64,000 bases of DNA from IMG/VR virus record IMGVR_UViG_3300009108_000751, positions 1 through 64,000 of that record; one strand, 5' to 3'. Position 1 is the first letter of the stretch; each line of letters opens with the position of its first letter. A program made the translations under genes and the position numbers. The notes below the pieces were generated by a model, which worked only from the letters and a program-made list of their open reading frames with translations, was not told the DNA's origin and ran no database searches. Below, piece after piece: positions 1,220 to 20,835 of the stretch.

Positions 1220-1242
1220 CTCTAAAACAGTATAGATATAAT
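1214..1242 (+). promoter_or_regulatory. GTGTAA-N17-TATAAT promoter
   Basis: GTGTAA 1214-1219, TATAAT 1237-1242. Confidence 0.8.
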
Positions 1243-1260
1243 AAGGGCGAAGGAGGCTTC

Positions 1261-2583: not shown

Positions 2584-3398
2584 TCTGAGAGATTCTGTTT
2601 GGCACGCCGGCGTGGTGGTTGCCACCGTCAGCTTGAGTGCCGCTTTTCTGGGCGGGATCGGCCTGATCCTGGTTCGAGAAGCTTACCGTGACTGGAAGGG
2701 TGAGAAGATCAAGCCCATCAAAGTGTGGGAGGAGAAGAAGTGGCCCGACAGGGTGATGAAGACTCTTGCTGACGAGGATCCTAAGTCCGGATTGGATGTG
2801 CTATGATGTGGATTGCTGAGATTGCGATGTGGGTTCTGGCGACCCTGCTCATCACGGGCGGCTTCGCCGCGATCATCGCTAACGCGTTCTTTGGCTACCC
2901 TGACGGAGATTGACGTGCCCGTATGGCTCAACCACACCCTGATGGTTCTGGTCTGTGTCGCAGCATATGTCTTCTCCTTTCTAACACTTTACAAAACTTG
3001 ATGAGATTATGACCCTTTTAGAAACACTTGCTTTCTTGTTCGCAATTGCCTATCACGTCCTGATTGCCTGGTTCGGCATCACTACCCTGATCTGGATCTT
3101 TTGGGAACGTCGTACAGTCCGACCGCTGGAAGCCCGGATCAATCGGCTCGATTATGAGATCGAGGAGATCGAGGGGCACGACTTCATGCGAGGTGAGACC
3201 CCTGAAAGCCGAGCGCTACGCAAAGCACGAGACATCGATAAGCTGGCCATGAACGACGAGGAGGAGCGGATCGACAAGTTCCTGCGCAAGTGGGGCTTCT
3301 TTCGCGTGTTCTACCGCGACCCCTACTCCCGCTCAGCAACCCGTTACACCCGAGAACGCCAACGGCTACAAAAGAGCCTTGGCATTGTAGATTCCTGA
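2573..3398 (+). CDS. run of small membrane proteins (2573-2806, 2803-2913, 2915-3001, 3009-3398)
   Basis: Consecutive, overlapping short ORFs, each with one hydrophobic helix. Confidence 0.5.
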
Positions 3399-3408
3399 GA
3401 GACACAGT

Positions 3409-3720
3409 ATGATCACCAAAGGAGATCTGATGATCGAAGATAAAGAAGAGCCCCAGATCCGAGACCTGAAGGCGTTGATGGATAAGTGCGGAGACAGCCT
3501 TCCCACACCATGGGACCGCGATTGGGGTGCAGCCTCACCGAGTTACCCATGGCACGTATACGTGGTGTCTCAAGGTCAGAAACCGCACCGCATCTGGTCC
3601 TTCAAGGATCGCCAGAGCGCGCACGATCTGGCTAAGAAGAACCTGCCGACTTACCGCAAGTCCGGAGGCTTCGTGATGGTGCACAACTACCTCACTGGTA
3701 AGTCGATCACGCTCAAATGA
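3409..3720 (+). CDS. hypothetical protein
   Basis: 103-aa ORF, ATGA overlap with the next gene. Confidence 0.55.
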   Translation: MITKGDLMIEDKEEPQIRDLKALMDKCGDSLPTPWDRDWGAASPSYPWHVYVVSQGQKPHRIWSFKDRQSAHDLAKKNLPTYRKSGGFVMVHNYLTGKSITLK

Positions 3721-4328
3721 TCAAGCTGCTTAGTAAGCTTCCTTGGTCTTTCACGCTCGCCGTCTCCGGCGGGCCTGACTCTATGGCGGCACTCGACTTC
3801 TTCCATCGAGGCAAGAAGGACTTTAGGGTTGTCCACGTTAATCACGGCACAGTGCACGCATCCGAAGCTGAAGAACTGGTAAGGTCTGAGTGCGCACGTC
3901 TCCAGGTGAACTTGCGCGTAGAGAAGGTCATTCGAAAGCGAGACCTGCAGGAGAGCTGGGAAGAGTTCTGGCGCAACGAGCGCTACCGGATCTTCGACAC
4001 AGTCACAGGTCCTGTGCTCACCTGTCACAACCTTGACGACGCGGTCGAGTGGTGGGTTTACACAGCAATGCATGGCCGGCCGCGACTTATTCCCGAGCGC
4101 AACGGCTCCGTGATCCGACCTTTCCTGCTCACTCCCAAGAAGACGCTGAGGAAGTGGTGCAAGGATCACGACGTTGCCTTCTGCGACGATCCGGGCAATG
4201 TCAATGAACAATATATGAGATCCATCGTTCGCCACCAGATAGTGCCTCTGGGCAAGCGGGTCAATCCGGGCCTGGAAAAGGTCGTGAAGAAGATGCTGAT
4301 CGCGCAACACGGCGCGGTGGGCAAGTGA
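3717..4328 (+). CDS. tilS: tRNA(Ile)-lysidine synthetase-like protein, PP-loop catalytic domain only
   Basis: AVSGGPDS, HVNHG, TCHNLDDAVE, IRPFL, DDPGN, RSIVRH match TilS N-domain motifs; only 203 aa. Confidence 0.8.
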   Translation: MIKLLSKLPWSFTLAVSGGPDSMAALDFFHRGKKDFRVVHVNHGTVHASEAEELVRSECARLQVNLRVEKVIRKRDLQESWEEFWRNERYRIFDTVTGPVLTCHNLDDAVEWWVYTAMHGRPRLIPERNGSVIRPFLLTPKKTLRKWCKDHDVAFCDDPGNVNEQYMRSIVRHQIVPLGKRVNPGLEKVVKKMLIAQHGAVGK

Positions 4329-4609
4329 GCGAACTCCAAGAAGGGCGACCTGAGGTTGAGCCGGGTGACTTGATCGTGTTCGAGGACGGCACCGATCACC
4401 CGTCAAACTTTCTGGTATGTGAGATCTGCAGGGACAAGGGCGATAGACCAGTACTGCGGGGATTATGGAATAGCGACACCGGCCAGATGGGCGCAGTGCT
4501 TCGAGGTTACGCTGAAGTCATGACTGCCGACATGCTCAAGCAGCACTTTCTAACTCGGTCTACCGACAAGTGGATCCGGGAAGACAAGATCCTGAGGATC
4601 TGGGGATGA
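4325..4609 (+). CDS. hypothetical protein (SH3-like)
   Basis: GTGA overlap with tilS; VEPGDLIVF. Confidence 0.5.
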   Translation: MSELQEGRPEVEPGDLIVFEDGTDHPSNFLVCEICRDKGDRPVLRGLWNSDTGQMGAVLRGYAEVMTADMLKQHFLTRSTDKWIREDKILRIWG

Positions 4610-4866
4610 AAATTGAACCGCAAAGCAAGCTAATGCACGCTATCCTGAACGCTGACCGCGTCTTCAAGGGCATTATCGACGGTTCCTACACTCTTACCAC
4701 TGACGGAGGAGTATTTAGATTAGGGCACGGGGAAGACCACTGGCTGTGGAAGGGGCATAATCGAGTAGCCTTCGTAGTTAAACAAGGTGACGAATGGCAC
4801 GTTACAATGCTAGCACCAGAACATATTGACCTACTGGAGGGCCACGATGCTGGAACTACTCCTTAG
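4606..4866 (+). CDS. hypothetical protein
   Basis: ATGA overlap; probable start 4606. Confidence 0.5.
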   Translation: MKIEPQSKLMHAILNADRVFKGIIDGSYTLTTDGGVFRLGHGEDHWLWKGHNRVAFVVKQGDEWHVTMLAPEHIDLLEGHDAGTTP

Positions 4867-5152
4867 CCTTGCGTTGACGGCACCGCCGCAATACTATCAT
4901 AAACCCAAACAACCCAAGGCCACTTACCGAAAGGCCGTCCAAAAGCGCCAAGTAGACGGAGTTGTCAGGTATCTCCGCCGGCAAGATCCTGCAGTTATCC
5001 AGCAGGTGATGCGTCGTATGGGCTGGATGTTTCGCACCGAACCGCGGGATGCTTGCCGAAAGAAGAAGAAGTCGGATCTGGAAAAGATCAACGACTGGGA
5101 AATGAGAATGCTGTGTGAAATGGCAGGGCTTCCCTGTTACAAGAAAAGGTAA
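4847..5152 (+). CDS. hypothetical protein with signal-peptide-like N-terminus
   Basis: SD GGAGG; MLELLLSLALTAPP. Confidence 0.5.
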   Translation: MLELLLSLALTAPPQYYHKPKQPKATYRKAVQKRQVDGVVRYLRRQDPAVIQQVMRRMGWMFRTEPRDACRKKKKSDLEKINDWEMRMLCEMAGLPCYKKR

Positions 5153-5181
5153 GTGTAAATCTCCCTCGTGATCGTTATAAT
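5153..5181 (+). promoter_or_regulatory. GTGTAA-N17-TATAAT promoter driving the tRNA
   Basis: GTGTAA 5153-5158, TATAAT 5176-5181. Confidence 0.8.
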
Positions 5182-5197
5182 ATAATGTATGAGATAT

Positions 5198-5274
5198 GGG
5201 GGATTAGCTCAATTGGTCAGAGCACTCGACTCATAATCGATAGGTTCTGGGTTCAAGTCCCAGGTCCCCTACCA
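5198..5274 (+). tRNA. tRNA with CAT anticodon (Ile2 favoured; elongator Met possible)
   Basis: Cloverleaf: acceptor GGGGGAT/GTCCCCT, D arm GCTC/GAGC, anticodon arm TCGA-CTCATAA-TCGA, T arm CTGGG-TTCAAGT-CCCAG, encoded CCA; lacks initiator hallmarks. Confidence 0.92.
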
Positions 5275-5584
5275 ACCAGACCTGAGCACGTCGTCAAACT
5301 GCTCACACGGGAGTTACACAGTCATGGATGTTAGAGCACCCTGTCCTTTCGCCACTTCGATCGCAGCGTATCTCACGTTTCCTAACCCTGGCGCAAAGCC
5401 CAAGGTGTTCGTGACACGTGAGCAGTTGTGTGAGATGAAGTTAGTGGACGCTGAGAAACGCCCAGTGGAACGCAAAGGTTTAGGCGAGAACGTTGATACT
5501 TATGCTTGATGTACGACGAATCCCTTATAGGTGTTATGATGCTGGGCTTTATTGCTTTCGGGATCATGATATCGATGGCGTTTG

Positions 5585-5899
5585 ATGGCGATCTCTGAAG
5601 TACTTCGCCTAAGATACCTCAAGGAACCTGGAGAAGAAATGATGAATGGTGTGACCTACTACACTGTTAGTTATCACATGCAACCGATAGCACACTTCAA
5701 GGATTATAGTGCAGCCGTGAGATTCGCCTCTGAAGAACGTAAGCGTCGGCTTGAGGCAGTCAAAACCCTGGATCCGCCCATGCTAAAGGGTGAAATGCGA
5801 GGAGAAGTTGTCAGCATCAAGTACGGAGTTGCAGTTCAGCAAGTTGATATCGTCTTTGCAGACATGATAGACAGTAGCGAGGAAATCAAGTTTGGCTGA
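5585..5899 (+). CDS. hypothetical protein
   Basis: ~104-aa ORF in the co-directional run. Confidence 0.5.
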   Translation: MAISEVLRLRYLKEPGEEMMNGVTYYTVSYHMQPIAHFKDYSAAVRFASEERKRRLEAVKTLDPPMLKGEMRGEVVSIKYGVAVQQVDIVFADMIDSSEEIKFG

Positions 5900-6179
5900 C
5901 AACACGCGTGCTTTACTAATGCGGGTTTTGACTGGCAAGGGCACAGATCTAGACAAGCTCGACGCAGTTTCTAACTTAATCGCAGAAAAGATGGCGATGT
6001 CCGAAGCAATGTCTGACAAGATAACAGCAGGAAGCTTTGTCCAGGGACACAACGTTCTCAAGCACTTGCTTAGCTTAGATCGTGTTCTCGAGACAATGTC
6101 TCTGATGGAGACTACGGGAGATCACGATGTCCCAGAACTCTGTGTTGTCACTGACGGTGACTGCGTCGGGAAAAACTAA
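5892..6179 (+). CDS. hypothetical protein
   Basis: 95-aa ORF overlapping the previous stop. Confidence 0.5.
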   Translation: MADNTRALLMRVLTGKGTDLDKLDAVSNLIAEKMAMSEAMSDKITAGSFVQGHNVLKHLLSLDRVLETMSLMETTGDHDVPELCVVTDGDCVGKN

Positions 6180-6201
6180 CAAATCAGGCTCAATAGCTCT
6201 T

Positions 6202-6230
6202 GTGTAACATACTTACTAACGTGGTATGAT
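6202..6230 (+). promoter_or_regulatory. GTGTAA-N17-TATGAT promoter
   Basis: GTGTAA 6202-6207, TG-G-TATGAT 6225-6230. Confidence 0.7.
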
Positions 6231-6249
6231 GTACGCGGAGGAAAAAGGT

Positions 6250-6468
6250 ATGGCTTCCTTAAAGCGACAACGAAAAGTTATTAGTCCTCGACAGCGTCCC
6301 CGTCACACCCCACCCAAAGAACTCGTGCTGGAACTACCACTTCCACGTCACGAGAGTATACCCAGGGATCACGACGTTGAAGCGCAAGAAAGCTCGAAAG
6401 AGCAAGGCGAGGTTATCATCAACCTCAACGAAGAAGACGATCCCTGTGTCATCCGTGATGCGTTCTAA
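6250..6468 (+). CDS. small disordered protein (basic N-terminus, LELPLP motif, acidic tail)
   Basis: SD GGAGG; start 6250 because ATG 6226 overlaps the -10 box. Confidence 0.55.
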   Translation: MASLKRQRKVISPRQRPRHTPPKELVLELPLPRHESIPRDHDVEAQESSKEQGEVIINLNEEDDPCVIRDAF

Positions 6469-6637
6469 GTTCACCACCGCAGAGATCGAAGAAGTCACTT
6501 TTGAATACCAAAGGATGCTAGATGCCGCGATATCCGACGGCAACAAGAAGAGCATCAATGCCCTAGTCCAAATCATCGCCGACCTTCACGTTTGTGTAAA
6601 ACACGCATCTGATGGTTATAATAAGGATGAAGACTAG
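6458..6637 (+). CDS. hypothetical protein
   Basis: Overlaps the previous stop; probable ATG 6458. Confidence 0.45.
   Translation: MRSKFTTAEIEEVTFEYQRMLDAAISDGNKKSINALVQIIADLHVCVKHASDGYNKDED
6594..6622 (+). promoter_or_regulatory. GTGTAA-N17-TATAAT promoter
   Basis: GTGTAA 6594-6599, TATAAT 6617-6622. Confidence 0.8.
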
Positions 6638-6646
6638 GAGATAAAG

Positions 6647-6787
6647 ATGGACGCGATACTCGCTCTCGCTTTACTATTCGGGGTTCCACTACTATCAGCA
6701 CTTTTTATTGTACGTGAGGCGCGCCTTGCGCGCGAGAGGCACGTTGCAAAGCTCCAAGAGGAAAGGGAGAATGAACGATGGATCTGA
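6647..6787 (+). CDS. 46-aa membrane peptide
   Basis: SD AGGAG, MDAILALALLFGVPLLSALFIV (below the ORF-track cutoff). Confidence 0.55.
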   Translation: MDAILALALLFGVPLLSALFIVREARLARERHVAKLQEERENERWI

Positions 6788-6987
6788 TCCAAGAAGGTAA
6801 TCTGCTCATCCAGCAGGTGACTGACCTGCTCAACGAAGTGAGTCCTGAGAAATGTCCAAGCGGCCCTGAGTTCACTAACTTTCTTGTTGCGAACGCTGAT
6901 CGTCTTCCTACTGACGCGGGCACAATCGTGACGCTCGCTGCAGACCTTGAAGCTCAGTTACTGGAGCACGAAGGCACCGTTCACTGA
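6778..6987 (+). CDS. hypothetical protein
   Basis: SD GGGAG; ends just before the next promoter. Confidence 0.55.
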   Translation: MDLIQEGNLLIQQVTDLLNEVSPEKCPSGPEFTNFLVANADRLPTDAGTIVTLAADLEAQLLEHEGTVH

Positions 6988-6988
6988 T

Positions 6989-7017
6989 GTGTAAGTTCGA
7001 AGCGCTGAGTATATAAT
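6989..7017 (+). promoter_or_regulatory. GTGTAA-N17-TATAAT promoter
   Basis: GTGTAA 6989-6994, TATAAT 7012-7017. Confidence 0.8.
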
Positions 7018-10879: not shown

Positions 10880-11083
10880 GTGTTGATCAATCTAACTGAT
10901 GAAGAGCTCGACGAGATATCGACTTACACAGGTTTGGATATCGCAATGCAGTACCCGCTCGATGCCACGCCCATCATATTCTTCAGTCATGACGGTCAAG
11001 GCGCCGTCAAGTTCGTCACGGTTCTCAAAGATGCTCCGATCGGCTCAGAGTCGGTGTGTAAGTGGGAGGGGGATGGTTTATAA
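10880..11083 (+). CDS. hypothetical protein
   Basis: SD GAGG; stop lies inside the next TATAAT. Confidence 0.45.
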   Translation: MLINLTDEELDEISTYTGLDIAMQYPLDATPIIFFSHDGQGAVKFVTVLKDAPIGSESVCKWEGDGL

Positions 11084-11084
11084 T
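11056..11084 (+). promoter_or_regulatory. GTGTAA-N17-TATAAT promoter
   Basis: GTGTAA 11056-11061, TATAAT 11079-11084; CCTGGGGAGG leader. Confidence 0.8.
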
Positions 11085-11112
11085 AGCCGTGAATAAAGCC
11101 TGGGGAGGCACG

Positions 11113-11682
11113 ATGAAAGTAGAAGTTTACAAGAAGTATCGGCACGGCAAGACCTACGTCTCAGGCGAGCTCAAGGGAGCGGGTGTTTACGACTCTGATC
11201 CGGATCTCGAAGTTGATGGGATCGTGTATCCTCACCGTGATCGCGCCATGCTCATGCTCACTGAAGCTGGTGACAGGGGCGAACTGGTCCTCCAGCTCAT
11301 GCTCAGTGAAGCTCAAGTCGACCACCTGAGGGACGTGCTCTATGAGGTGAGTAAGCAGATGATGGTGGATCGGAACCGGCGAGAGCTGGAGGCAGGACAC
11401 GCCCGACAAAAGCGTGTAAGCGCGGAAGAGGCCGGTTATAATAGGGGTGAAGATAACGGAGACGACTTCATGAAGCCTAAACTCTACTCTTTCAAGTTTC
11501 ACCGCAACGAGTTCGGGGATGTTGGCTTCAACCAGATCATGGCCCCAAGCCTTGAGCACGCCATCGAGTTCGCTAAGGACGAGTTCGAAGGTGGAACCGC
11601 AAATCTCAAGGTTGACGTTGACACCTTCAAGGTGGTCGAAGACGTGAACGCTTACTACAACTCATTCCCGCTGATGGATTAG
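11113..11682 (+). CDS. hypothetical protein
   Basis: SD GGGGAGG, ATG 11113. Confidence 0.65.
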   Translation: MKVEVYKKYRHGKTYVSGELKGAGVYDSDPDLEVDGIVYPHRDRAMLMLTEAGDRGELVLQLMLSEAQVDHLRDVLYEVSKQMMVDRNRRELEAGHARQKRVSAEEAGYNRGEDNGDDFMKPKLYSFKFHRNEFGDVGFNQIMAPSLEHAIEFAKDEFEGGTANLKVDVDTFKVVEDVNAYYNSFPLMD

Positions 11683-11691
11683 GAGAAAGCC

Positions 11692-11922
11692 ATGCAGCTC
11701 GCACACGCTCAAGCGATCGTTGAAGAACTTACACAGACTTTAGGTGTTGAAGCCTCTGTTCGAGAGAACTACTCGGGTCGAGGCATGTATGGCCGTACGA
11801 CCGCGGCGGTCAGCACTCACTACTCGGAAGATGTCGTCGCCGCTGCGCGCGATCTCGGCCTTCCGCTCCGTCGCTCCAACCTCAACGTTGACAGCATGGG
11901 CTTGGGCAAGGTGGTTTACTAG
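11692..11922 (+). CDS. small phage protein with YSGRGMYG motif
   Basis: SD AGGAG; motif recognised from small phage proteins. Confidence 0.65.
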   Translation: MQLAHAQAIVEELTQTLGVEASVRENYSGRGMYGRTTAAVSTHYSEDVVAAARDLGLPLRRSNLNVDSMGLGKVVY

Positions 11923-11961
11923 TGGTGTAAGTCGTTCGACTCTCACGACGACCCAAGAGCT

Positions 11962-11990
11962 GTGTAAGTTCCGGGGCAGCCTGGTATAAT
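11962..11990 (+). promoter_or_regulatory. GTGTAA-N17-TATAAT promoter
   Basis: GTGTAA 11962-11967, TATAAT 11985-11990; an orphan GTGTAA at 11925 has no -10. Confidence 0.8.
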
Positions 11991-12024
11991 ATCCACGTAA
12001 AGAACAAAGCCTAAGGGGCGCAAC

Positions 12025-12354
12025 ATGGCAACCGGCATCTTCATTCCCAAGCGCGAGATCACCGAAGCTATTCAGCGACACTGTGACCGCATTCAAGAAG
12101 AGCTTAGCAACTCCTTCGATATCGGTGACCCAGTTCAGGCCAGGCACGGTCGGGCACTGTGGGACGCTCAGGTCGAGATTGCTCGAGACAGGCTGGAAGC
12201 CAGAATGGAACAAGCCTTGGGCACTGCGGTGGACGACATCATCGTGGAGCTCGACGACGGTGAGTTCTTCGCTCAAGCAGCGCAAGCAATTGACGAGGAG
12301 GAGACCATTCCCGGTGTCCAACAGCTGTCGGAGTTGTGTAAGCCGCAGCGCTGA
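12025..12354 (+). CDS. hypothetical acidic protein
   Basis: Follows the promoter leader; stop falls in the next promoter spacer. Confidence 0.6.
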   Translation: MATGIFIPKREITEAIQRHCDRIQEELSNSFDIGDPVQARHGRALWDAQVEIARDRLEARMEQALGTAVDDIIVELDDGEFFAQAAQAIDEEETIPGVQQLSELCKPQR

Positions 12355-12364
12355 GTGTTATAAT
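12336..12364 (+). promoter_or_regulatory. GTGTAA-N17-TATAAT promoter
   Basis: GTGTAA 12336-12341, TATAAT 12359-12364; leader shares 22 nt with that at 11991. Confidence 0.8.
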
Positions 12365-12397
12365 ATCCACGTAAAGAACAAAGCCTGGGGAGGCAAT

Positions 12398-12721
12398 ATG
12401 GTTTTAGAAGTTCAAACTCACAACGATGGTAACATCAACGTTAACGGCACGTGCCTCCAAGGCTACCTCAACGACACTCAGGGCCAGCAGCTGGTCGAGA
12501 AGTTCGGTGAACCCCTGCTCGGATATCCCGAGGACAAGGTCGAGTTCGAGTGGAACCTCCTGATCGAGGGCAAGCCGATCACGATCTACTCGTGGAAGAA
12601 CTACGGCCAGAAGTCGTTCGAGCAGATCCGGGTGTGGAACGTGGGTGGCAAGAACAAGCAAGTGCTCGACCTCCTCCGTCAGGTCGGGCTCAGGCCCAGT
12701 GAGTCACCCAGCTTTTGGTAG
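12398..12721 (+). CDS. small phage protein (GTCLQGY...FGEP...DKV..EW...TIYSWK...WNVGG pattern)
   Basis: SD GGGGAGG, ATG 12398; pattern recognised from aquatic phages. Confidence 0.7.
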   Translation: MVLEVQTHNDGNINVNGTCLQGYLNDTQGQQLVEKFGEPLLGYPEDKVEFEWNLLIEGKPITIYSWKNYGQKSFEQIRVWNVGGKNKQVLDLLRQVGLRPSESPSFW

Positions 12722-12722
12722 T

Positions 12723-12751
12723 GTGTAACTCCAAGGGCAGCTGGTTATAAT
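12723..12751 (+). promoter_or_regulatory. GTGTAA-N17-TATAAT promoter
   Basis: GTGTAA 12723-12728, TATAAT 12746-12751. Confidence 0.8.
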
Positions 12752-12790
12752 ATAAACGAAGAAAACGCAAACAACCTGGGGAGGTTCTAA

Positions 12791-13534
12791 ATGCGACTCA
12801 AAACTCAACATGCCGATATCGAACGCGGCGCAAACATTCTCTCGATCGATATTCCGGACCAGCTCAAGAAGCGCTGCAAGACCGGCATCAAGTTTATCGA
12901 TGACGCTTTCGGTGGCAAGGGCATGACCCCATCGGTCTGCACCCTCTTTACCGGTACGCCAGGTGCGGGTAAGACCACGCTCATGCTCCAGCTGGCTGAC
13001 AGCTTAACGCGTCAAGGCCATGTCTGCCTCTTTAACACGGCAGAGGAAAGCCTCTATCAGGTTCGTGGTGTGGTGGATCGGCTCAAGCTACGCAACGGCT
13101 TCGTCTGCGGCCAGGACAACCATGTCCCCACGCTGCTCAAGCACTGTGATGAGATTCGTGAAGCCAACCCTGGTAAGCAACTCTTCGTCATCATCGACTC
13201 GCTTCAAACGCTGGATGATGGGCACTTCAACTCCGGCCGCATTACGACGGCGACGGCTGAACGCTCACTCCAAGCCATCACGGACTACTGCAAAGAGCAT
13301 TACGCCTGCGCAATCGTGGTTGGCCAGGTGACCAAGTCTGGTAAGATGGCGGGTTCTAACAAGCTCAAGCACATGGTGGACGCTCATTGCCACCTGCGCA
13401 TCGAGGACAGCGAGAAGAGTGAGTTCTTCCAGTACCGCGTCTTCGAGGTTCCCAAGAACCGCTTCGGTGGCGCTGGCCACGGATACGTGCTGGACATGAC
13501 GGCACGCGGACTTCGGGAGTACGGCATTCTCTAG
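12791..13534 (+). CDS. radA: RadA/Sms-like RecA-fold ATPase (ATPase domain only)
   Basis: GTPGAGKT, AEES, IIDSLQ, GQVTKSGKMAGSNKLKHMVDA, KNRFG; no N-terminal Zn finger or Lon-like domain. Confidence 0.8.
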   Translation: MRLKTQHADIERGANILSIDIPDQLKKRCKTGIKFIDDAFGGKGMTPSVCTLFTGTPGAGKTTLMLQLADSLTRQGHVCLFNTAEESLYQVRGVVDRLKLRNGFVCGQDNHVPTLLKHCDEIREANPGKQLFVIIDSLQTLDDGHFNSGRITTATAERSLQAITDYCKEHYACAIVVGQVTKSGKMAGSNKLKHMVDAHCHLRIEDSEKSEFFQYRVFEVPKNRFGGAGHGYVLDMTARGLREYGIL

Positions 13535-13588
13535 GCACAACTCTCCCCAGGGGCGGGAGGTGAGGCAACTCCCTCCCGCCGTGCCTAG
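13531..13588 (+). terminator. GC-rich stem-loop after radA (terminator or processing/stabilising site)
   Basis: GGCGGGAGG-T-GAG-GCAA-CTC-CCTCCCGCC within outer CTAGGCAC/GTGCCTAG; no clear U tract. Confidence 0.5.
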
Positions 13589-13597
13589 GGGTCTTGT

Positions 13598-13626
13598 GTG
13601 TAAGATGAGAAGTCATAGGTTATAAT
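13598..13626 (+). promoter_or_regulatory. GTGTAA-N17-TATAAT promoter
   Basis: GTGTAA 13598-13603, TATAAT 13621-13626. Confidence 0.8.
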
Positions 13627-13653
13627 AGCCCTGAAGATAACAAGGAGCTCCTA

Positions 13654-13848
13654 ATGGATCCCAACAAAGTTCACGTCGTCAATGCTTATACTCGCAAAGT
13701 CTACGGTTCGTTTGACCTGGACATTGATGCACGTCAATACATGCGCAACATGCTCCTGAAGGAGTGCGACGGTCCTAATGATGACGACCGCGAGGTGCCA
13801 AAGATCTGGTGCTTCGATGCGCGTGGAGTTGAGACTACATCCTTCTAG
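13654..13848 (+). CDS. hypothetical protein
   Basis: SD AAGGAG; stop abuts the next promoter. Confidence 0.6.
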   Translation: MDPNKVHVVNAYTRKVYGSFDLDIDARQYMRNMLLKECDGPNDDDREVPKIWCFDARGVETTSF

Positions 13849-13876
13849 GTGTAAGTTTCAGAGAACCTGTTATAAT
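13849..13876 (+). promoter_or_regulatory. GTGTAA-N16-TATAAT promoter
   Basis: GTGTAA 13849-13854, TATAAT 13871-13876 (only 16-bp copy). Confidence 0.75.
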
Positions 13877-13907
13877 ATAAGCGAATCATATGCCTGGGGA
13901 GGCAACA

Positions 13908-14177
13908 ATGGCTGAGAATAAAGAATACATTTCTGGCGACTATGTCGCGATCATTGCATCGATGGACGATGTTGAGAGTGTGGATGAACTGGTTGAGATG
14001 GTGAAGGGTGGCCAACGCCCCGAGCATTCCAGCCTCTTCCGCTTTGAGCTGGACACTGACACACCGCAGCTGGTCAACCTGGTCGGTCGCGGTTACTTCT
14101 TCGAGAACGGTTGGAGCATGGACCACACGGTGTCGTGGATCGGTCCGGAAAGCGAGGTCCGCGATGCCCAAGCCTAA
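13908..14177 (+). CDS. hypothetical acidic protein
   Basis: SD GGGGAGG, ATG 13908. Confidence 0.6.
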   Translation: MAENKEYISGDYVAIIASMDDVESVDELVEMVKGGQRPEHSSLFRFELDTDTPQLVNLVGRGYFFENGWSMDHTVSWIGPESEVRDAQA

Positions 14178-14382
14178 CAAGTATCTCTACCTCTACGTCG
14201 TCCAAGGCAACTACGGTGGCTATGGATGGGAGGACCTTGCGGAGAGCGAATCCTACCAGGAAGCTCACTACAACCTCAAGGAGTACCGCATCTCAAGTGG
14301 CCCAGCTCCACATCGTATCATTCAGCGACGTGAGCCCAACCCGGCATACTTCAGCAAGCAAATGGCAGCTCCCGGTTTCTAG
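14164..14382 (+). CDS. small phage protein (YVVQGNYG..GWEDL...LKEYR pattern)
   Basis: SD GAGG, ATG 14164. Confidence 0.65.
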   Translation: MPKPNKYLYLYVVQGNYGGYGWEDLAESESYQEAHYNLKEYRISSGPAPHRIIQRREPNPAYFSKQMAAPGF

Positions 14383-14410
14383 TGTAACTTCCCGAGCTAG
14401 TAGTTATAAT
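14382..14410 (+). promoter_or_regulatory. GTGTAA-N17-TATAAT promoter
   Basis: GTGTAA 14382-14387, TATAAT 14405-14410. Confidence 0.8.
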
Positions 14411-14441
14411 GAAACGTAAAGGCGTTAAAGGGAAGAAGAAG

Positions 14442-14585
14442 ATGAAGAAGATTCCTAAGATTAGACAAAAGCACGTCAAGGAGATGCTGCTCAATCGCAA
14501 GGATGGTGCTCATCACAATCGTTCCAAGGACGTCAAGCGTGGAAGTTCACGCAAACCCAAGCACAAGGGGAAGCAGGAATGGTAG
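14442..14585 (+). CDS. 47-aa very basic peptide, possibly ArfA/BrfA-like
   Basis: MKKIPKIRQKHVKEMLLNRKDGAHHNRSKDVKRGSSRKPKHKGKQEW; first ORF after a promoter. Confidence 0.5.
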   Translation: MKKIPKIRQKHVKEMLLNRKDGAHHNRSKDVKRGSSRKPKHKGKQEW

Positions 14586-14809
14586 GCAAGAAGGTCAAGT
14601 TGACGGGTAAGAGCCGTCACGGTAAGAACCGGGTTCGTGAGCAAGGTGACGCCTGGGAAGTGGTGGGCGAGAGGGACAGCGTCCAGTTTCGCACCTCGGC
14701 TCCTGGGCCATTCCTCTTACTTCAGTCTGAAAGCACAGGACCTCACGGGCGCCACACTAGATGGGTCAGCTTACAACGTGATCCTGACTTCACCGTGGAG
14801 GTGCTATAA
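14579..14809 (+). CDS. hypothetical protein (SH3-like)
   Basis: MVGKKVKLTGKSRHGKNRVREQG..WEV. Confidence 0.6.
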   Translation: MVGKKVKLTGKSRHGKNRVREQGDAWEVVGERDSVQFRTSAPGPFLLLQSESTGPHGRHTRWVSLQRDPDFTVEVL

Positions 14810-14958
14810 TGTTTGACTTCCTGTTCTACCAAGAAGACATTCCCTCAAAGGGCTACCGAGCTGGTGACCTCAAGCCCGGATACGCAATCGCCGCATTGGC
14901 CCTATGCTTCCTGGCTGGCGCCTACCTGGAAGGACTAGAGCAAATGCAACCTTACTAG
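14809..14958 (+). CDS. 49-aa membrane peptide
   Basis: TAATG coupling, SD GGAGG, hydrophobic C-half. Confidence 0.5.
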   Translation: MFDFLFYQEDIPSKGYRAGDLKPGYAIAALALCFLAGAYLEGLEQMQPY

Positions 14959-14967
14959 CCTATTATA

Positions 14968-14996
14968 GTGTAACCCAAAAGTGGGTAGTGTACAAT
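14968..14996 (+). promoter_or_regulatory. GTGTAA-N17-TACAAT promoter
   Basis: GTGTAA 14968-14973, TACAAT 14991-14996. Confidence 0.75.
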
Positions 14997-15020
14997 AGCG
15001 GCGAATAGGAGGTGCTGGTT

Positions 15021-15477
15021 ATGGATGAATGCAGCATGGTATGTGAGAAGACAGGCGAGGTGCTCGCACGTGAGCCGTTTAGAGAGAACCTGTTGATCAC
15101 GGCTAAAGAGCAAGGCCTGCCAGTTATTAGTAAGCATAGTTTTGCCATTCATGAGAGCACCGTTTTGGTGGATTGTGGGTGTGGTGGAAACATGTATAAG
15201 TGCGGAGTGCAAGCATGAACGATAAGCAAGTAGCATTCTTATGCGGCATTGGCACAATCCTGCTCTTTCCCGCTCTTCCTATCATCGCCCTAGCCTTGGG
15301 TGTTGTTGGCTTCTTGTCACTCAAGCCTAAGGGAAGACGATAATGCAGATCGAACTCACACTCCCTCTCCCTCCTCCCGAGTGGATCGAGCGCATGGAAC
15401 GAGAGCAGCAGCCAGAGATCCAGAATGATCCCATGGTGGACTTCGACATCGACGACGGTGTAACCTTCGACCTATAG
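15021..15477 (+). CDS. three coupled small ORFs: 15021-15218 (Cys-rich), 15215-15343 (membrane), 15343-15477 (acidic, LTLPLPPP)
   Basis: SD AGGAGG; ATGA and TAATG overlaps. Confidence 0.5.
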
Positions 15478-15486
15478 AGATATAAT
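15458..15486 (+). promoter_or_regulatory. GTGTAA-N17-TATAAT promoter
   Basis: GTGTAA 15458-15463, TATAAT 15481-15486. Confidence 0.8.
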
Positions 15487-15509
15487 AGCCCTGAAGATAA
15501 GGAGCTACG

Positions 15510-15692
15510 ATGAGCAAGTCACTAACAGCCATCATCAATCGGTTCGGTGCCAAACGCCTCAAGGGCGATGGCTTCACCCAACGTATCCAGTTTAGCTCCT
15601 CCGGACAGGCACAACGTGCCGTGTGGGAGATCAGCAGCTCCACTGGACGGCAGTGCTGGAGCTCGGGTGACATCGTCGAGGTGCTCAAGTAG
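15510..15692 (+). CDS. hypothetical protein
   Basis: SD AAGGAG; single-gene cassette. Confidence 0.6.
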   Translation: MSKSLTAIINRFGAKRLKGDGFTQRIQFSSSGQAQRAVWEISSSTGRQCWSSGDIVEVLK

Positions 15693-15694
15693 CA

Positions 15695-15723
15695 GTGTAA
15701 GTCTCCAGGGCTAGTGTTATAAT
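15695..15723 (+). promoter_or_regulatory. GTGTAA-N17-TATAAT promoter
   Basis: GTGTAA 15695-15700, TATAAT 15718-15723. Confidence 0.8.
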
Positions 15724-15749
15724 AGTCCCGAAGATAAGGAGATACCGGC

Positions 15750-15920
15750 ATGGCACAGTGGGGAAACTTTACTGGCGGAGCGGCACCACTGGACGAAGCG
15801 CCAATGGACAGCGGCCCGATGTCTCCGGAGATGCAACGGCGCGTTTTCGATATTCTGGTTAGTACCGGTTCGGATCCCGCGGCACTCAAGGCTTCAGGTG
15901 AATACCCGAATGTTGTGTAA
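15750..15920 (+). CDS. 56-aa hypothetical protein
   Basis: SD AAGGAG; its stop is the TAA of the next GTGTAA. Confidence 0.55.
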   Translation: MAQWGNFTGGAAPLDEAPMDSGPMSPEMQRRVFDILVSTGSDPAALKASGEYPNVV

Positions 15921-15943
15921 CTCCCGTTGGTGGATGTTATAAT
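15915..15943 (+). promoter_or_regulatory. GTGTAA-N17-TATAAT promoter
   Basis: GTGTAA 15915-15920, TATAAT 15938-15943. Confidence 0.8.
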
Positions 15944-15964
15944 AAGGGCGAATAGGAGATGATC

Positions 15965-16260
15965 ATGGCAAGCTCACTCAAAACTTTCAAGGTTGGCTAC
16001 TCCAAGAACGTCGGCTATAAGAAGCACGGCAGTCGCACCGTAAAGGCTCGCAACGCCGAGGAAGCCAAGGTCCGAGTTCGGCACATTGTCGATGGCGCCT
16101 TTGGCCTCTACATTCAGGCTCCTCAAGTATGAGTTACGTCATCGAATATCAGGACAAGATGGGTCGACGTTTCCGAGCCGTGGTGGCCATGCTCCCGCAT
16201 TGCATCAAGGCTAAGAAAGCTGAGCTTCGTGCTCAAGGCTATAGCATTGTTGGTTACTAG
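15965..16260 (+). CDS. two coupled small basic ORFs (15965-16132, 16129-16260)
   Basis: SD AGGAG; ATGA overlap; second stop abuts the next promoter. Confidence 0.55.
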
Positions 16261-16289
16261 GTGTAACTCCCGCAAGGGCATGGTACAAT
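16261..16289 (+). promoter_or_regulatory. GTGTAA-N17-TACAAT promoter
   Basis: GTGTAA 16261-16266, TACAAT 16284-16289. Confidence 0.78.
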
Positions 16290-16313
16290 AGCCGTGAAGA
16301 TAAGGAGTTAGAG

Positions 16314-16589
16314 ATGGCCATCAAAACTGATAAGAGCGTAGGATATCATCCTGGACAGCTGGTCAAGTTCTTCAACCCCTTCAAGGAGCCGTATGAGGAG
16401 CAGATCGCCGAAGGCATCGTAACCTCAGTGGATCATTGGATGCAGACGTTGACCGTAGGTATCGGCAAGGCTCAAGCCCAGGAAGCTGAGTGGTTCGTCG
16501 GCGGACACCAGGTGGTGAAGATGAACAACCCTCACATCGAGGTCGTCCCCGACAAGGTGACTCAGATCTCCAACGTGAAAGATGTGTAA
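16314..16589 (+). CDS. hypothetical protein (SH3-like, HPGQLVKF)
   Basis: SD AAGGAG; its stop is the TAA of the next GTGTAA. Confidence 0.65.
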   Translation: MAIKTDKSVGYHPGQLVKFFNPFKEPYEEQIAEGIVTSVDHWMQTLTVGIGKAQAQEAEWFVGGHQVVKMNNPHIEVVPDKVTQISNVKDV

Positions 16590-16612
16590 CTTCGAGAGCT
16601 GTAAGTTATAAT
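16584..16612 (+). promoter_or_regulatory. GTGTAA-N17-TATAAT promoter
   Basis: GTGTAA 16584-16589, TATAAT 16607-16612. Confidence 0.8.
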
Positions 16613-16636
16613 AGTTCCGAAGATAAGGAGTTAGAG

Positions 16637-16942
16637 ATGACGTTGAATAACATTGACACCCAGTTCGCGGTAGCTCGATCAGAGATCCGTGCCCTGATGA
16701 AGCACGTCAACCCCAACACCACCGTAGGTGGCCAGGCCTGTGACGCCTTGCAAGGTATGATCGATGCGCTGGACTCCATCCAGAACGATAGCTATAAGAG
16801 CTCTGACAGCTTTCATCGCTACCCGCTAGATGTTAGAGATCGGCCTCTGCATGCGGATGACGAACCCACCAATCCTAACTTCCGGGCTTTCAAGGACCTG
16901 GAAGACGACGAGGAAATGCGGCAGACCGAAAGGTTGTGCTAG
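16637..16942 (+). CDS. hypothetical protein
   Basis: Leader ending AAGATAAGGAGTTAGAGATG, same as at 16314; ATG 16637. Confidence 0.65.
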   Translation: MTLNNIDTQFAVARSEIRALMKHVNPNTTVGGQACDALQGMIDALDSIQNDSYKSSDSFHRYPLDVRDRPLHADDEPTNPNFRAFKDLEDDEEMRQTERLC

Positions 16943-16947
16943 CACCG

Positions 16948-16976
16948 GTGTAACTCGGCGAGCTACCGGTTATAAT
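16948..16976 (+). promoter_or_regulatory. GTGTAA-N17-TATAAT promoter
   Basis: GTGTAA 16948-16953, TATAAT 16971-16976. Confidence 0.8.
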
Positions 16977-17020
16977 AAAGACGTAATAAGCCAAACAACA
17001 TACCTGGGGAGGTAACAAAC

Positions 17021-17437
17021 ATGGCAAACGCAGAACGCAAAACTTGGATCCACGGATTCTTCCAAAACACATTCAACGCTGAGACTGGCAACTGGCAGCT
17101 CCGTGATAGCCGTAACGAGGCTCTGATCGCAGAAGGTCCCAAGGCCGCTAAGATCGGCAAGCTCGGTGCAGCTATGACCAAGACTGAGAAGGCGTGGGAC
17201 AAGCTCCGCAACCTGGAACGTCAGATGGAACTGGCGCAGCGCGCTTACAGCAAAGCTCACCGCGTGATGTTGGACCTCCAGCTAGACATCGACATGGAAG
17301 AGGCATCTCGGGCTAGCGTGGAAGGACTTCGCGAAGAGACTCGCAAGAGCCTCCTCCGCATCGCTAAGCGACGCAACATCGTTGGCCGTCACAATCTTAC
17401 CAAGGAAGAACTGGTCAATGCGCTAAGTATCGACTAA
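17021..17437 (+). CDS. coiled-coil protein with C-terminal Rho-N/HeH-like motif
   Basis: LLRIAKRRNIVGRHNLTKEELVNAL resembles the Rho termination factor N-terminal HeH. Confidence 0.6.
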   Translation: MANAERKTWIHGFFQNTFNAETGNWQLRDSRNEALIAEGPKAAKIGKLGAAMTKTEKAWDKLRNLERQMELAQRAYSKAHRVMLDLQLDIDMEEASRASVEGLREETRKSLLRIAKRRNIVGRHNLTKEELVNALSID

Positions 17438-17443
17438 GACATC

Positions 17444-17709
17444 ATGGACAGACTAGAGGCAATACTCTTCGTCGTGCTAGGCATCACCGCTTCGGTGGTG
17501 CTTGGCATATTGGGCGAGGCGGTAGAAGAAAGAGTAAGAACCTGGTTGAGAGATCGGAAGTACGGAGATAAGAAGTGATGAGAAAGATCGCGGCGAAGAT
17601 CCTATTCCTACTAGCGAGAGTGTTCCTCAGTAGGGGGATGCTAGTGGGACAGTGGTGCCAGAACAAGGCCATACTCCTGCTCAGCGGTGTAAGTGCGCAT
17701 CGCGAGTGA
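17444..17709 (+). CDS. two small ORFs (17444-17578 membrane peptide; 17578-17709)
   Basis: TGATG coupling; hydrophobic segments. Confidence 0.4.
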
Positions 17710-17715
17710 TATAAT
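17687..17715 (+). promoter_or_regulatory. GTGTAA-N17-TATAAT promoter (last copy seen)
   Basis: GTGTAA 17687-17692, TATAAT 17710-17715. Confidence 0.8.
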
Positions 17716-17730
17716 GTCAGCGAATAGGAG

Positions 17731-17922
17731 ATGATCATGGAAGGCTTGTGGCTCTTAGCTGGATTCTTCGTGGTGTGGTTCGTGGTGGCGTTCTTACGGT
17801 CGTTCATCGTGTACGCGTGGAAGAACACGGTCAAGGTGTTCGGCGTGGTCGTGGGCATGTTCGGTGTCCTGGCCCTAGGTGTCGGTGTTGCCGCACTGGT
17901 CGCCGTACTGGTCTTAGCCTAG
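17731..17922 (+). CDS. two-helix membrane protein
   Basis: SD AGGAG; almost entirely hydrophobic. Confidence 0.6.
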   Translation: MIMEGLWLLAGFFVVWFVVAFLRSFIVYAWKNTVKVFGVVVGMFGVLALGVGVAALVAVLVLA

Positions 17923-17940
17923 TTCCTGCAGAGGGTACTA

Positions 17941-18150
17941 CGCAGGGGGCCTGGACGCAGGGCGCTAGGGGCGCCGGGCCCTTAGGGGGCTAGGCGCAGG
18001 GGGCCCCCGCAAACTGTGTAGGGGGTACCCGGGGTGGGCTTGGCCTAAGTCTAGACTCACTCTGCTCCAGAATTTTCCGGGAACTTTTTTCAATACTAAA
18101 AAGCCCATTTTCACAAAAATCTCTTCGAGAAAATTTTCGAAAACTTTTTC
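17941..18150. repeat. non-coding G-tract block followed by phased A/T tracts
   Basis: Nine G>=3 runs at 17945-18038 (CGCAGGGGGCC twice), then A/T tracts at 18071-18149. Confidence 0.75.
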
Positions 18151-20833: not shown

Positions 20834-20835
20834 GC

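What the first reader, a model, noticed from the sequence alone, without database searches (positions are those of the whole stretch)
11056..17922. Array of self-contained promoter-leader-ORF cassettes with recurring leader families
Seen: 15 promoters in ~6.7 kb, each driving 1-3 tiny ORFs. Upstream stops are embedded in or abut the next promoter: TAA of GTGTAA at 15920 and 16589 (also 1219); TAG at 13848, 14382, 16260; TAA in TATAAT at 11083. Leaders fall into families: AG(C/T)(C/T)(C/G)(T/C)GAAGATAA..GGAG (13627, 15487, 15724, 16290, 16613); ..CCTGGGGAGG (11085, 12365, 12752, 13877, 16977); GCGAATAGGAG (14997, 15944, 17716); and an identical 22-nt ATCCACGTAAAGAACAAAGCCT at 11991 and 12365. 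An orphan GTGTAA sits at 11925. Known: T4-type PeSL elements shuffle early genes by recombination. Inference: recombination between promoter/leader repeats builds a hypervariable host-takeover gene array, perhaps aided by the embedded RadA-like ATPase. With few terminators, read-through should accumulate, and the array could act as an RNAP sink.
Basis: partly seen in the sequence, partly recalled or inferred. Interest (0 to 1): 0.75.

Follow-up and report, generated by a model that had tools for sequence, protein, structure and literature searches.

The report
Shuffling promoter-gene cassettes in marine jumbo phage
This stretch is the early-gene region of an uncultured marine giant phage, built from about 16 small units that each have their own strong promoter, and close relatives show these units being gained, lost, swapped and moved. 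This kind of modular evolution is known in T4-type phages but is seen here in a different lineage and a simpler form.

Summary
Window 11056-17922 holds 16 copies of GTGTAA-N17-TA(T/C)AAT, all on the + strand. Fifteen are intergenic and one lies in frame inside a gene. Each is followed by a short leader with a strong Shine-Dalgarno site and 1-3 tiny ORFs. The leader families, the 22-nt identical leader pair, the orphan GTGTAA and the stops abutting promoters all check out.

The window is the first 64 kb of a 235.7-kb uncultured marine myovirus record. Its genes are almost all on one strand, and no phage RNA polymerase was detected.

Both hexamers are almost invariant in relatives (1-2% mismatch, against 14-17% in spacer and leader). 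The tiny ORFs change mostly at codon position 3, so these are real promoters and real genes.

Forty-seven close relatives show about 77 distinct cassette deletions, insertions, replacements and moves. About half of the event ends fall in promoter-leader repeats, which cover 15% of the sequence. One cassette is missing through two different crossovers inside the repeat.

Promoterless gene junctions are equally enriched per base, so selection for intact units also contributes. Only 1-3 of the 16 promoter regions have a stem-loop, so these are not PeSLs in the strict sense. The proposed roles of the RadA-like ATPase and of an RNA polymerase sink remain untested.

Verdict: a new variant of a known kind.

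The parts
11056..11922 (+). Cassette 1. Promoter 11056-11084, leader of the CCTGGGGAGG family, ORF 11113-11682 (189 aa) and ORF 11692-11922 (76 aa).
   Evidence: The upstream ORF ends at 11083 inside TATAAT.
11414..11442 (+). Promoter-like motif inside ORF 11113-11682, read in frame. GTGTAA falls within codons read as R-V-S and TATAAT is read as Y-N. An in-frame SD and ATG follow at 11470.
   Evidence: Relatives L100, L109, L113 and L116 keep one continuous ORF of 186-201 aa with the same linker. The C-terminal 56 aa also match L009 alone.
11925..11930 (+). Orphan GTGTAA directly after the stop of ORF 11692-11922, with no -10 element. Relatives carry inserts of 179 or 751 nt between here and 11961.
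11962..12354 (+). Cassette 3. Promoter 11962-11990, 22-nt leader repeat 11991-12012, ORF 12025-12354 (109 aa). Absent from six relatives, with the junction in the leader repeat.
12336..12721 (+). Cassette 4. Promoter 12336-12364 (overlaps the end of the previous ORF), the same 22-nt leader at 12365-12386 followed by CCTGGGGAGG, ORF 12398-12721 (107 aa).
12723..13534 (+). Cassette 5. Promoter 12723-12751, ORF 12791-13534 (247 aa). This is a RadA/Sms-type ATPase domain alone, and it is the conserved anchor of all related arrays.
   Evidence: Pfam KaiC PF06745 at 2e-13. Invariant Walker A and KNRFG. Matches RadA 5lkm residues 68-272 at 1e-27. Found in more than 150 related loci.
13535..13595 (+). 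The only strong RNA hairpin in the array, between the ATPase gene and the next promoter. It is probably an attenuator or a processing site.
   Evidence: dG -41.6 kcal/mol, z -4.1, none of 200 shuffles as stable
13598..13848 (+). Cassette 6. Promoter 13598-13626, leader of the GAAGATAA family, ORF 13654-13848 (64 aa).
13849..14382 (+). Cassette 7. Promoter 13849-13876 (16-nt spacer), CCTGGGGAGG leader, ORFs 13908-14177 (89 aa) and 14164-14382 (72 aa). Deleted cleanly in L094 and L133.
14382..14958 (+). Cassette 8. Promoter 14382-14410, ORFs 14442-14585, 14579-14809 and 14809-14958. Relatives carry four different inserts (263, 380, 579 and 774 nt) at this promoter.
14968..15477 (+). Cassette 9. 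Promoter 14968-14996 (TACAAT), GCGAATAGGAG leader, ORFs 15021-15218, 15215-15343 and 15343-15477.
15458..15692 (+). Cassette 10. Promoter 15458-15486, GAAGATAAGGAG leader, ORF 15510-15692 (60 aa). Missing in L097 and L106 through two different crossovers.
15695..15920 (+). Cassette 11. Promoter 15695-15723, GAAGATAAGGAG leader, ORF 15750-15920 (56 aa). Relatives have this cassette in three other positions.
15915..16260 (+). Cassette 12. Promoter 15915-15943, GCGAATAGGAG leader, ORFs 15965-16132 and 16129-16260.
16261..16589 (+). Cassette 13. Promoter 16261-16289 (TACAAT), GAAGATAAGGAG leader, ORF 16314-16589 (91 aa).
16584..16942 (+). Cassette 14. Promoter 16584-16612, GAAGATAAGGAG leader, ORF 16637-16942 (101 aa).
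16948..17709 (+). Cassette 15. Promoter 16948-16976, CCTGGGGAGG leader, ORFs 17021-17437 (138 aa), 17444-17578 and 17578-17709. In L017, L109, L111 and L133 the homologous gene carries the 22-nt leader type instead.
17687..17922 (+). Cassette 16. Promoter 17687-17715, GCGAATAGGAG leader, ORF 17737-17922 (61 aa, hydrophobic).
860..7017 (+). Six more promoters of the same class upstream of the reported span: 860, 1214, 5153 (drives tRNA-Met 5198-5274), 6202, 6594 and 6989. The array therefore extends over about 1-18000.
17938..18150 (+). Conserved non-coding element at the downstream end of the array. It has three copies of CGCAGGGGGC and two copies of an AT-rich unit of about 19 nt.
   Evidence: Folding the alignment gave no covariation support for an RNA structure.

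Best explanation
What it is. This is the promoter-dense early-gene region of an uncultured marine jumbo myovirus.

How it is built. Each unit has four parts:
- a strong sigma-70-type promoter with a perfect or near-perfect TATAAT, a G at -14, and a lineage-specific -35-like GTGTAA 17 bp upstream;
- a short purine-rich leader of about 20-45 nt, falling into three sequence families;
- a strong Shine-Dalgarno site;
- one to three tiny genes.

Upstream stop codons sit in or against the next promoter, so the promoter-leader stretch (about 55-75 bp) is both the only non-coding DNA and the only sequence shared between units.

How it probably works (inferred). Host RNA polymerase most likely reads all units in one direction straight after DNA entry, with almost no terminators. 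Downstream genes would then also receive read-through transcripts.

How it evolves. Over evolutionary time the units are lost, gained, replaced and moved as blocks. Recombination within the short promoter-leader repeats regenerates a working promoter at each junction, and selection removes products that break a gene.

Shown here: the motif statistics, conservation of the hexamers, coding status of the ORFs, structural variation among relatives, and crossover positions.
For: Motif.
- 19 hits against 0.03 expected, all on one strand.
- The same class occurs at a few other genes in the genome, including just upstream of the DnaE-type polymerase.

Functional constraint in orthologous positions of 47 relatives.
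- Mismatch rates are 1.6% in the -35 hexamer and 1.0% in the -10 hexamer, against 17% in the spacer and 14% in the leader.
- 59% of substitutions in the ORFs fall at codon position 3.

Lineage-wide signal.
- GTG(T/C)AA-N16-18-TAnnnT occurs 491 times on the gene strand, 122 times on the other strand, and 70 times as a reversed control, in 1.27 Mb of related loci with GC content from 27 to 61%.

No phage polymerase.
- No match to the multisubunit family PF00562.
- PF00940 also gave no match, but it rang in none of the control genomes, so that result is weak.
- The weak sigma-factor hit was not confirmed.

Shuffling.
- About 77 distinct structural events separate the window from relatives whose ATPase is 84-99% identical. 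Of 154 event ends, 72 lie in promoter-to-ATG stretches that make up 15% of the sequence.
- The 15510 cassette is missing in L106 with the crossover in the promoter spacer. It is missing in L097 with the crossover after the Shine-Dalgarno site.
- Four different inserts sit at promoter 14382.
- The 15750 cassette occurs in four contexts.
- About 103 ORF families occur across 43 arrays. Only 22 of them are in window 10.9-18 kb.
- Leaders are more alike within a genome than between genomes: 0.43 against 0.33 identity.
- Metagenome assemblies often break in this region.
Against: There are no expression data. Promoter activity, timing and the identity of the polymerase are all inferred.

The -35-like GTGTAA matches the TTGACA consensus at only 3 of 6 positions. 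It is nevertheless conserved across relatives of very different base composition. That pattern could point to a phage-supplied specificity factor rather than the host sigma factor alone.

Promoterless gene junctions hold 20 of 154 event ends in 3.8% of the sequence. This is about the same per-base enrichment as the promoter stretches, so the breakpoint distribution alone does not prove repeat-mediated recombination.

Perfectly identical tracts between repeats are short, 31 nt at most.

The ORFs have no recognised function, so 'host takeover' is an analogy.
Confidence: 0.75

Rival explanations
1. Selection only. Breaks and joins arise anywhere by illegitimate recombination. Only products that keep whole genes and one working promoter survive. 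The repeats mark where survivors can exist, not where recombination is favoured.
For: Promoterless gene junctions are enriched about as strongly per base as promoter-leader stretches. Many event ends lie at plain gene ends such as 13525-13534. There is no free intergenic DNA, so any viable junction has to fall in a promoter or leader.
Against: Junctions are seamless hybrids in register within the repeat, and the same cassette is missing through two different crossovers. The same leader appears in front of different genes in different relatives. Leaders are more uniform within a genome than between genomes.
Confidence: 0.2
2. The motif is read by a phage-supplied factor, either a co-injected polymerase or a specificity subunit, and not by the host sigma-70 holoenzyme alone.
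For: The first hexamer GTG(T/C)AA is non-canonical, yet it is conserved across related phages with GC content from 27 to 61% and nearly invariant in orthologous positions.
Against: The -10 element is a perfect TATAAT with G at -14 and a 17-bp spacer, which is the signature of primary sigma factors. No multisubunit polymerase was found, and the single-subunit search was uninformative because its controls were silent. The sigma hit was not confirmed. About 30% of the genome is missing by CheckV's estimate, so absence is not proven.
Confidence: 0.2
3. The GC-rich array is foreign or an assembly chimera, joined to an AT-richer phage genome.
For: GC is 50-55% in 1-18000 against 38-40% from 24 kb onward. 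GC3 is 0.65 against 0.36-0.39.
Against: Independent assemblies from other samples span the junction. L016 is 99.96% identical over window 16189-27434. L017 and L098 link the array to the SpoVR/PrkA region, and L133 crosses the boundary and runs on to about 20.8 kb. The same promoter class occurs elsewhere in the genome. Many relatives show the same GC-rich island around their arrays. Every array gene, including the conserved ATPase, has high GC3.
Confidence: 0.03
4. The main role of the array is physical rather than coding. A train of co-directional polymerases on unterminated strong promoters either draws the genome into the cell or soaks up host polymerase.
For: All promoters and nearly all genes point the same way. 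There are almost no terminators. A conserved repeat-rich non-coding element closes the array.
Against: The ORFs are under purifying selection, so coding matters. Nothing shows that the array lies at a physical genome end. Relatives extend upstream of window position 1.
Confidence: 0.1

Closest known systems
PeSL (promoter-early stem-loop) cassettes in the hyperplastic regions of T4-type phages (PMC2839356, PMC4122927)
   Same: Repeated strong sigma-70-like early promoters with a Shine-Dalgarno site and ATG, placed directly after upstream stop codons and in front of orphan ORFs. Insertions, deletions and replacements between close relatives have their junctions at these elements.
   Different: Stem-loops are absent from 13 of 16 elements. 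There is no AT-rich tract upstream of the -35 element. The -35 element is GTGTAA, not the E. coli consensus. Leaders fall into discrete families. The phage is not a recognisable T4 relative: it has a DnaE-type polymerase and no DNA match in the phage collection. Mini-circles could not be tested.
Host-takeover module of Bacillus phage SPO1 (26 small early genes in the 12.4-kb terminal region; PMC6873191, citing Stewart et al. 1998)
   Same: A compact block of small early genes in many short operons, each with a strong host-type promoter and a strong ribosome-binding site.
   Different: There is no sequence relationship. Location in a terminal repeat is unknown here. Host shut-off activity is untested. 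Cassette shuffling at promoters has not, to my knowledge, been described for SPO1.
Morons of lambdoid phages (independent promoter-gene-terminator units; from my own knowledge of Hendrix and colleagues' work)
   Same: Small accessory genes that carry their own promoter and are added or lost as units.
   Different: Morons are single insertions between core genes and have their own terminators. This is a tandem, co-directional array without terminators.
Bacterial RadA/Sms branch-migration helicase
   Same: The ATPase core has a Walker A motif and the KNRFG motif. The best solved matches are RadA 5lkm and 8rxc.
   Different: It is only 247 aa long. It aligns to RadA residues 68-272 only, so it lacks the N-terminal zinc finger and the C-terminal Lon-like domain.

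Membership tests
T4-type PeSL | Strong sigma-70-like early promoter | tested here: inconclusive
   The -10 element, the spacing and G at -14 fit. The -35 element matches at only 3 of 6 positions. Both hexamers are conserved. Activity was not measured.
T4-type PeSL | Stable stem-loop (terminator or attenuator) within or next to the promoter | tested here: not met
   Of 16 promoter regions, one is strong (z -3.8), two are moderate (z -2.2 and -3.0), and 13 are no better than shuffled sequence.
T4-type PeSL | [quoted passage not shown] | tested here: not met
   Information content upstream of the -35 element is about 0-0.4 bits, and that sequence is coding.
T4-type PeSL | Concentrated in hyperplastic regions in front of orphan ORFs | tested here: met
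   18 of the 22 exact sites in the genome lie in 1-18000. The ORFs have no family matches.
T4-type PeSL | Insertion, deletion and replacement junctions between close relatives lie at the elements | tested here: met
   72 of 154 event ends fall in 15% of the sequence, and hybrid promoters are seen at junctions. Promoterless junctions are also enriched.
T4-type PeSL | Excised mini-circles | not testable with these tools
   Needs reads or PCR on phage DNA.
SPO1-type host-takeover module | Cluster of small early genes in short operons with strong promoters and ribosome-binding sites | tested here: met
   24 ORFs of 42-247 aa in 15 intergenic-promoter units, with GGAG or GGAGG sites 4-8 nt before the ATG. 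Early timing is inferred.
SPO1-type host-takeover module | Location in the terminal redundancy; products shut off host functions | not testable with these tools
   The record is a linear fragment estimated at 70% complete. No functional data exist.
RadA/Sms | Walker A motif and KNRFG motif in a RecA-like core | tested here: met
   Invariant GxPGxGKTT and K222-N223-R224-F225-G226. RadA matches at 1e-27.
RadA/Sms | N-terminal C4 zinc finger and C-terminal Lon-like domain | tested here: not met
   The 247-aa protein aligns only to residues 68-272 of the 452-aa RadA.

The most novel reading that the evidence does not exclude
The roughly 18-20 kb array might be a specialised leading segment of the genome. 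Four features would fit that reading:
- It is closed by a conserved repeat-rich non-coding element at 17938-18150.
- It is read from a -35 element that stays constant across phages of 27-61% GC, and so perhaps by a conserved phage-supplied factor.
- It is kept at a GC3 about 25 points above the neighbouring genes.
- It is unterminated and co-directional.

On this reading it works like a first-entering, transcription-driven segment (as in T7 entry or T5 first-step transfer). The high GC3 would then be a footprint of very frequent recombination through GC-biased repair.
Probability: 0.12. Interest if true: 0.75.

Novelty: new variant of a known kind. Interest (0 to 1): 0.5.

Why it matters
Modular shuffling of early genes at repeated promoter cassettes has been documented mainly in T4-type phages. 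Here it appears in an unrelated, widespread and uncultured lineage of marine jumbo phages, and without the stem-loop part. This suggests that promoter-leader repeats alone are enough to create a gene-exchange hotspot.

The arrays hold a large open pool of tiny early proteins: about 100 families in 43 close relatives. That is the kind of place where host-takeover and anti-defence functions are usually found.

The conserved, unusual -35 element gives a simple sequence handle. It can be used to find early regions of this lineage in metagenomes, and to ask experimentally what reads it.

Tried and rejected
- DNA search of the array against 50,697 phage records found no match. The ATPase and PrkA found only distant cultured relatives, so no cultured reference phage exists.
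- The leader pattern searched in IMG/VR found only another contig of the same phage.
- Self-comparison of 1-24 kb found no long duplications. Only the short promoter-leader repeats recur.
- Searches for a phage RNA polymerase or sigma factor gave nothing. The PF00940 control search rang nowhere, so that negative is weak.
- Pfam and PHROGs on the small ORFs gave no functions, only three matches to families of unknown function.
- The idea that the TAA in GTGTAA is a designed stop was rejected. Only 3 of the 7 ORFs reaching the hexamer use it, as expected by chance.
- An RNA structure for the boundary element 17935-18075 was not supported (covariation term +2.4). Rfam found only the tRNA and tmRNA.
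- The chimeric-assembly explanation for the GC shift was rejected.
- The sequence upstream of the array in relatives does not match the right end of this record, so circularity could not be judged.
- The orphan GTGTAA at 11925 could not be explained as a remnant of the insert seen in L104 and L108.
- A literature search for the motif found nothing relevant.

Full report
**Context**

The window is the first 64 kb of a 235,681-bp IMG/VR virus record, classed as linear and estimated about 70% complete.
- Of the 48 ORFs of at least 400 aa, 47 are on the + strand.
- The genome encodes two tail-sheath proteins, a DnaE-type polymerase, ClpB, FtsH, pyruvate phosphate dikinase, PrkA and SpoVR.
- It also carries a tmRNA and two tRNAs.
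- No DNA match and only remote protein matches exist among 50,697 phage records.
- Relatives come from marine metagenomes.

It is therefore an uncultured marine jumbo myovirus.

**The observation**

The exact pattern GTGTAA, a gap of 12-20 nt, then TATAAT occurs 19 times in the window. All hits are on the + strand, against 0.03 expected. Allowing one mismatch per hexamer gives 16 sites between 11056 and 17715, and six more between 860 and 7017.

The consensus built from all 22 sites is GTGTAA, a 17-nt spacer, G at -14, TATAAT, an A, and then a conserved CGAA about 6 nt further on.

Each site is followed within 20-45 nt by GGAG or GGAGG and an ATG. The region holds 24 ORFs of 42-247 aa in 15 intergenic-promoter units.

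- The stop-codon positions are correct.
- The three leader families are correct.
- The identical 22-nt leaders at 11991 and 12365 are correct.
- The orphan GTGTAA at 11925 is correct.
- A repeat finder recovers the same elements independently as families of 36-60 nt at 60-82% identity.

One correction is needed. The site at 11414 lies inside a single ORF (11113-11682) that relatives keep intact. Its promoter and leader are translated as a linker.

**Are these real promoters and genes?**

In the aligned orthologous positions of 47 relatives:
- The -35 hexamer differs at 1.6% of positions and the -10 hexamer at 1.0%.
- The spacer differs at 17% and the leader at 14%.
- Substitutions within the ORFs fall at codon position 3 in 59% of cases. 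For almost every tiny ORF the figure is well above one third.

The same promoter class sits in front of a few genes elsewhere in the genome, including the polymerase gene.

No multisubunit phage RNA polymerase was found. The single-subunit family search was also negative, but its controls were silent, so it says little. The weak sigma-factor hit was not confirmed.

The most economical reading is that the host's primary holoenzyme uses these promoters early in infection. There is a caveat. The -35-like hexamer is non-canonical, yet it is conserved across a large family of related jumbo-phage contigs whose GC content ranges from 27 to 61%. In 1.27 Mb of those loci the motif occurs 491 times on the gene strand, 122 times on the opposite strand, and 70 times as a reversed control.

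**Terminators**

The consensus scan finds no terminator-like site on the + strand inside the array. Folding each promoter region gives:
- one strong hairpin, after the ATPase gene (13535-13595, dG -41.6 kcal/mol, z -4.1);
- two moderate ones (z -2.2 and -3.0);
- 13 regions indistinguishable from shuffled sequence.

Read-through along the array is therefore likely.

A metagenome scan with the ATPase returned 72 loci. Forty-six of them, plus L017 from the viral collection, are close relatives that align to the array at the DNA level; their ATPase is 84-99% identical at the amino-acid level. Aligned to the window, they show about 77 distinct structural events.

Examples:
- The 13849 cassette is cleanly absent in L094 and L133.
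- The 11962 cassette is absent in six loci, with the junction in the 22-nt leader repeat.
- In L098, eight cassettes (14410-16947) are replaced by 262 nt.
- Four different inserts sit at promoter 14382.
- The 15750 cassette occurs in four different contexts.
- The tRNA-Met cassette lies after the ATPase gene in a dozen relatives.

Neighbouring cassettes in a single relative can differ widely in protein identity to the window, for example 97% next to 44%. This points to replacement by distant alleles.

Across 43 arrays there are about 103 ORF families, of which 22 occur in window 10.9-18 kb.

Of the 154 event ends, 72 fall in promoter-to-ATG stretches that make up 15% of the sequence.

At nucleotide level the junctions are in-register hybrids. 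In L106 the -35 element and the first half of the spacer come from promoter 15458, and the rest comes from promoter 15695. In L097 the whole of promoter 15458 and its leader are joined to the 15750 gene after the Shine-Dalgarno site. These are two different crossovers removing the same cassette.

The 22-nt leader type also appears in front of the 17021 homologue in four relatives. Leaders are more alike within a genome than between genomes.

**Limits of that test**

The nine promoterless gene junctions take 20 of the 154 ends in 3.8% of the sequence. That is about the same per-base enrichment as the promoter stretches. There is no spare intergenic DNA, so any viable junction has to lie in a promoter-leader stretch or exactly at a gene boundary.

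Repeat-mediated recombination and selection for intact units are therefore entangled. I favour recombination within the repeats because of the in-register hybrids and the exchange of leaders between genes. The breakpoint statistics alone do not prove it.

**Comparison with what is known**

The nearest described system is the PeSL of T4-type phages. A PeSL is a strong early promoter combined with a stem-loop terminator. PeSLs sit in front of orphan ORFs in hyperplastic regions, and insertion and deletion junctions lie at them (PMC2839356, PMC4122927).

The present elements share the promoter, the placement and the junction behaviour. They fail two defining features: the stem-loop and the AT-rich upstream tract. 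The phage is also not a recognisable T4 relative. They work like PeSLs but are not members of that family.

The layout also resembles the SPO1 host-takeover module (PMC6873191). Location in a terminal repeat and host shut-off activity cannot be tested here.

The embedded 247-aa protein is a RadA/Sms ATPase core with the KNRFG motif. It lacks the zinc finger and the Lon-like domain. It is the one gene common to all related arrays. Nothing here shows that it promotes the shuffling.

**Unexplained features**

- GC3 is 0.65 in the array genes and 0.36-0.39 in the next 40 kb. GC2 is equal. Every array gene shares the high GC3, and many relatives show the same island. Several independent assemblies cross the boundary, so it is not a chimera.
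- A non-coding element at 17938-18150 is more conserved than the cassettes. It has three copies of a GC-rich 11-mer and two AT-rich repeats. It closes the array in every close relative that reaches that far. An RNA structure is not supported.

**Verdict**

The core interpretation is supported. The PeSL label, the ATPase role and the polymerase-sink idea are not established. This is a new variant of a known kind of system, and of moderate interest.

Noticed in passing
window 1-20000 against 20000-64000: A sharp compositional island. GC is 50-55% and GC3 is 0.65 in the array, against GC3 of 0.36-0.39 in the next 40 kb, with GC2 equal. Every array gene shares the high GC3, and many related phages show the same island around their arrays. 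The cause is unknown. Candidates are recombination-linked GC-biased repair, codon selection on early genes, or a regional mutation bias.
   Followed up: partly
window 17938-18150: A non-coding element that is more conserved than the flanking genes. It has three copies of CGCAGGGGGC, an invariant core of about 35 nt, and two copies of an AT-rich 19-mer. It is present at the array end in all close relatives that reach that far. No RNA covariation was found. It could be a protein-binding boundary, an origin of replication, or an entry-stop signal.
   Followed up: partly
window 34087-34408: A phage-encoded tmRNA (Rfam 137.8 bits) with tag peptide ANDDFDIYAIAA. The ANDD start resembles proteobacterial tags, which is a weak hint about the host (from my own knowledge).
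   Followed up: no
window 5153-5274; L113-L125, L134, L159: A promoter of the same class drives a tRNA-Met gene rather than a protein gene. In about a dozen relatives this tRNA cassette (88-99% identical in most, 73% in L134) sits directly after the ATPase gene instead.
   Followed up: partly
window 11113-11682: A conserved 189-aa ORF whose middle is a complete promoter-leader unit read in frame, followed by an in-frame SD and ATG at 11470. It looks like two cassettes fused by loss of a stop codon, and it may still express the C-terminal 70 aa separately.
   Followed up: partly
L011, L012, L028, L053, L080 (relatives with 55-61% GC): In these relatives the ATG follows the -10 box by only 6 nt (consensus AAGACCATG). 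Their arrays therefore appear to encode leaderless mRNAs. Other relatives have CA-rich leaders (L009, L051, L069). Leader type is lineage-specific.
   Followed up: partly
L012/L090 and L011/L091 (same contigs); L051/L077; L069/L082: Some related contigs carry two copies of the ATPase gene. In one pair the copies face opposite ways, each with its own promoter array.
   Followed up: no
window 27528-32153: A PrkA-SpoVR gene pair (Pfam E-values 1e-147 and 2e-126), followed by a 441-aa ORF with no Pfam match. PrkA and SpoVR stay in the same order at about 70% DNA identity in L017, and L098 covers the SpoVR part, in contrast to the array.
   Followed up: no
L016/L018 (start at window 16189), L017 (start near 16470), many 1-6 kb contigs: Independent metagenome assemblies frequently end inside the array. 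This fits strain-level structural variation or short repeats breaking the assembly graph.
   Followed up: no
window 18148-26359: In L017 and L098 the 8.2 kb downstream of the boundary element is replaced by 5.4-5.8 kb of unrelated sequence. This is a second variable region outside the promoter array.
   Followed up: no
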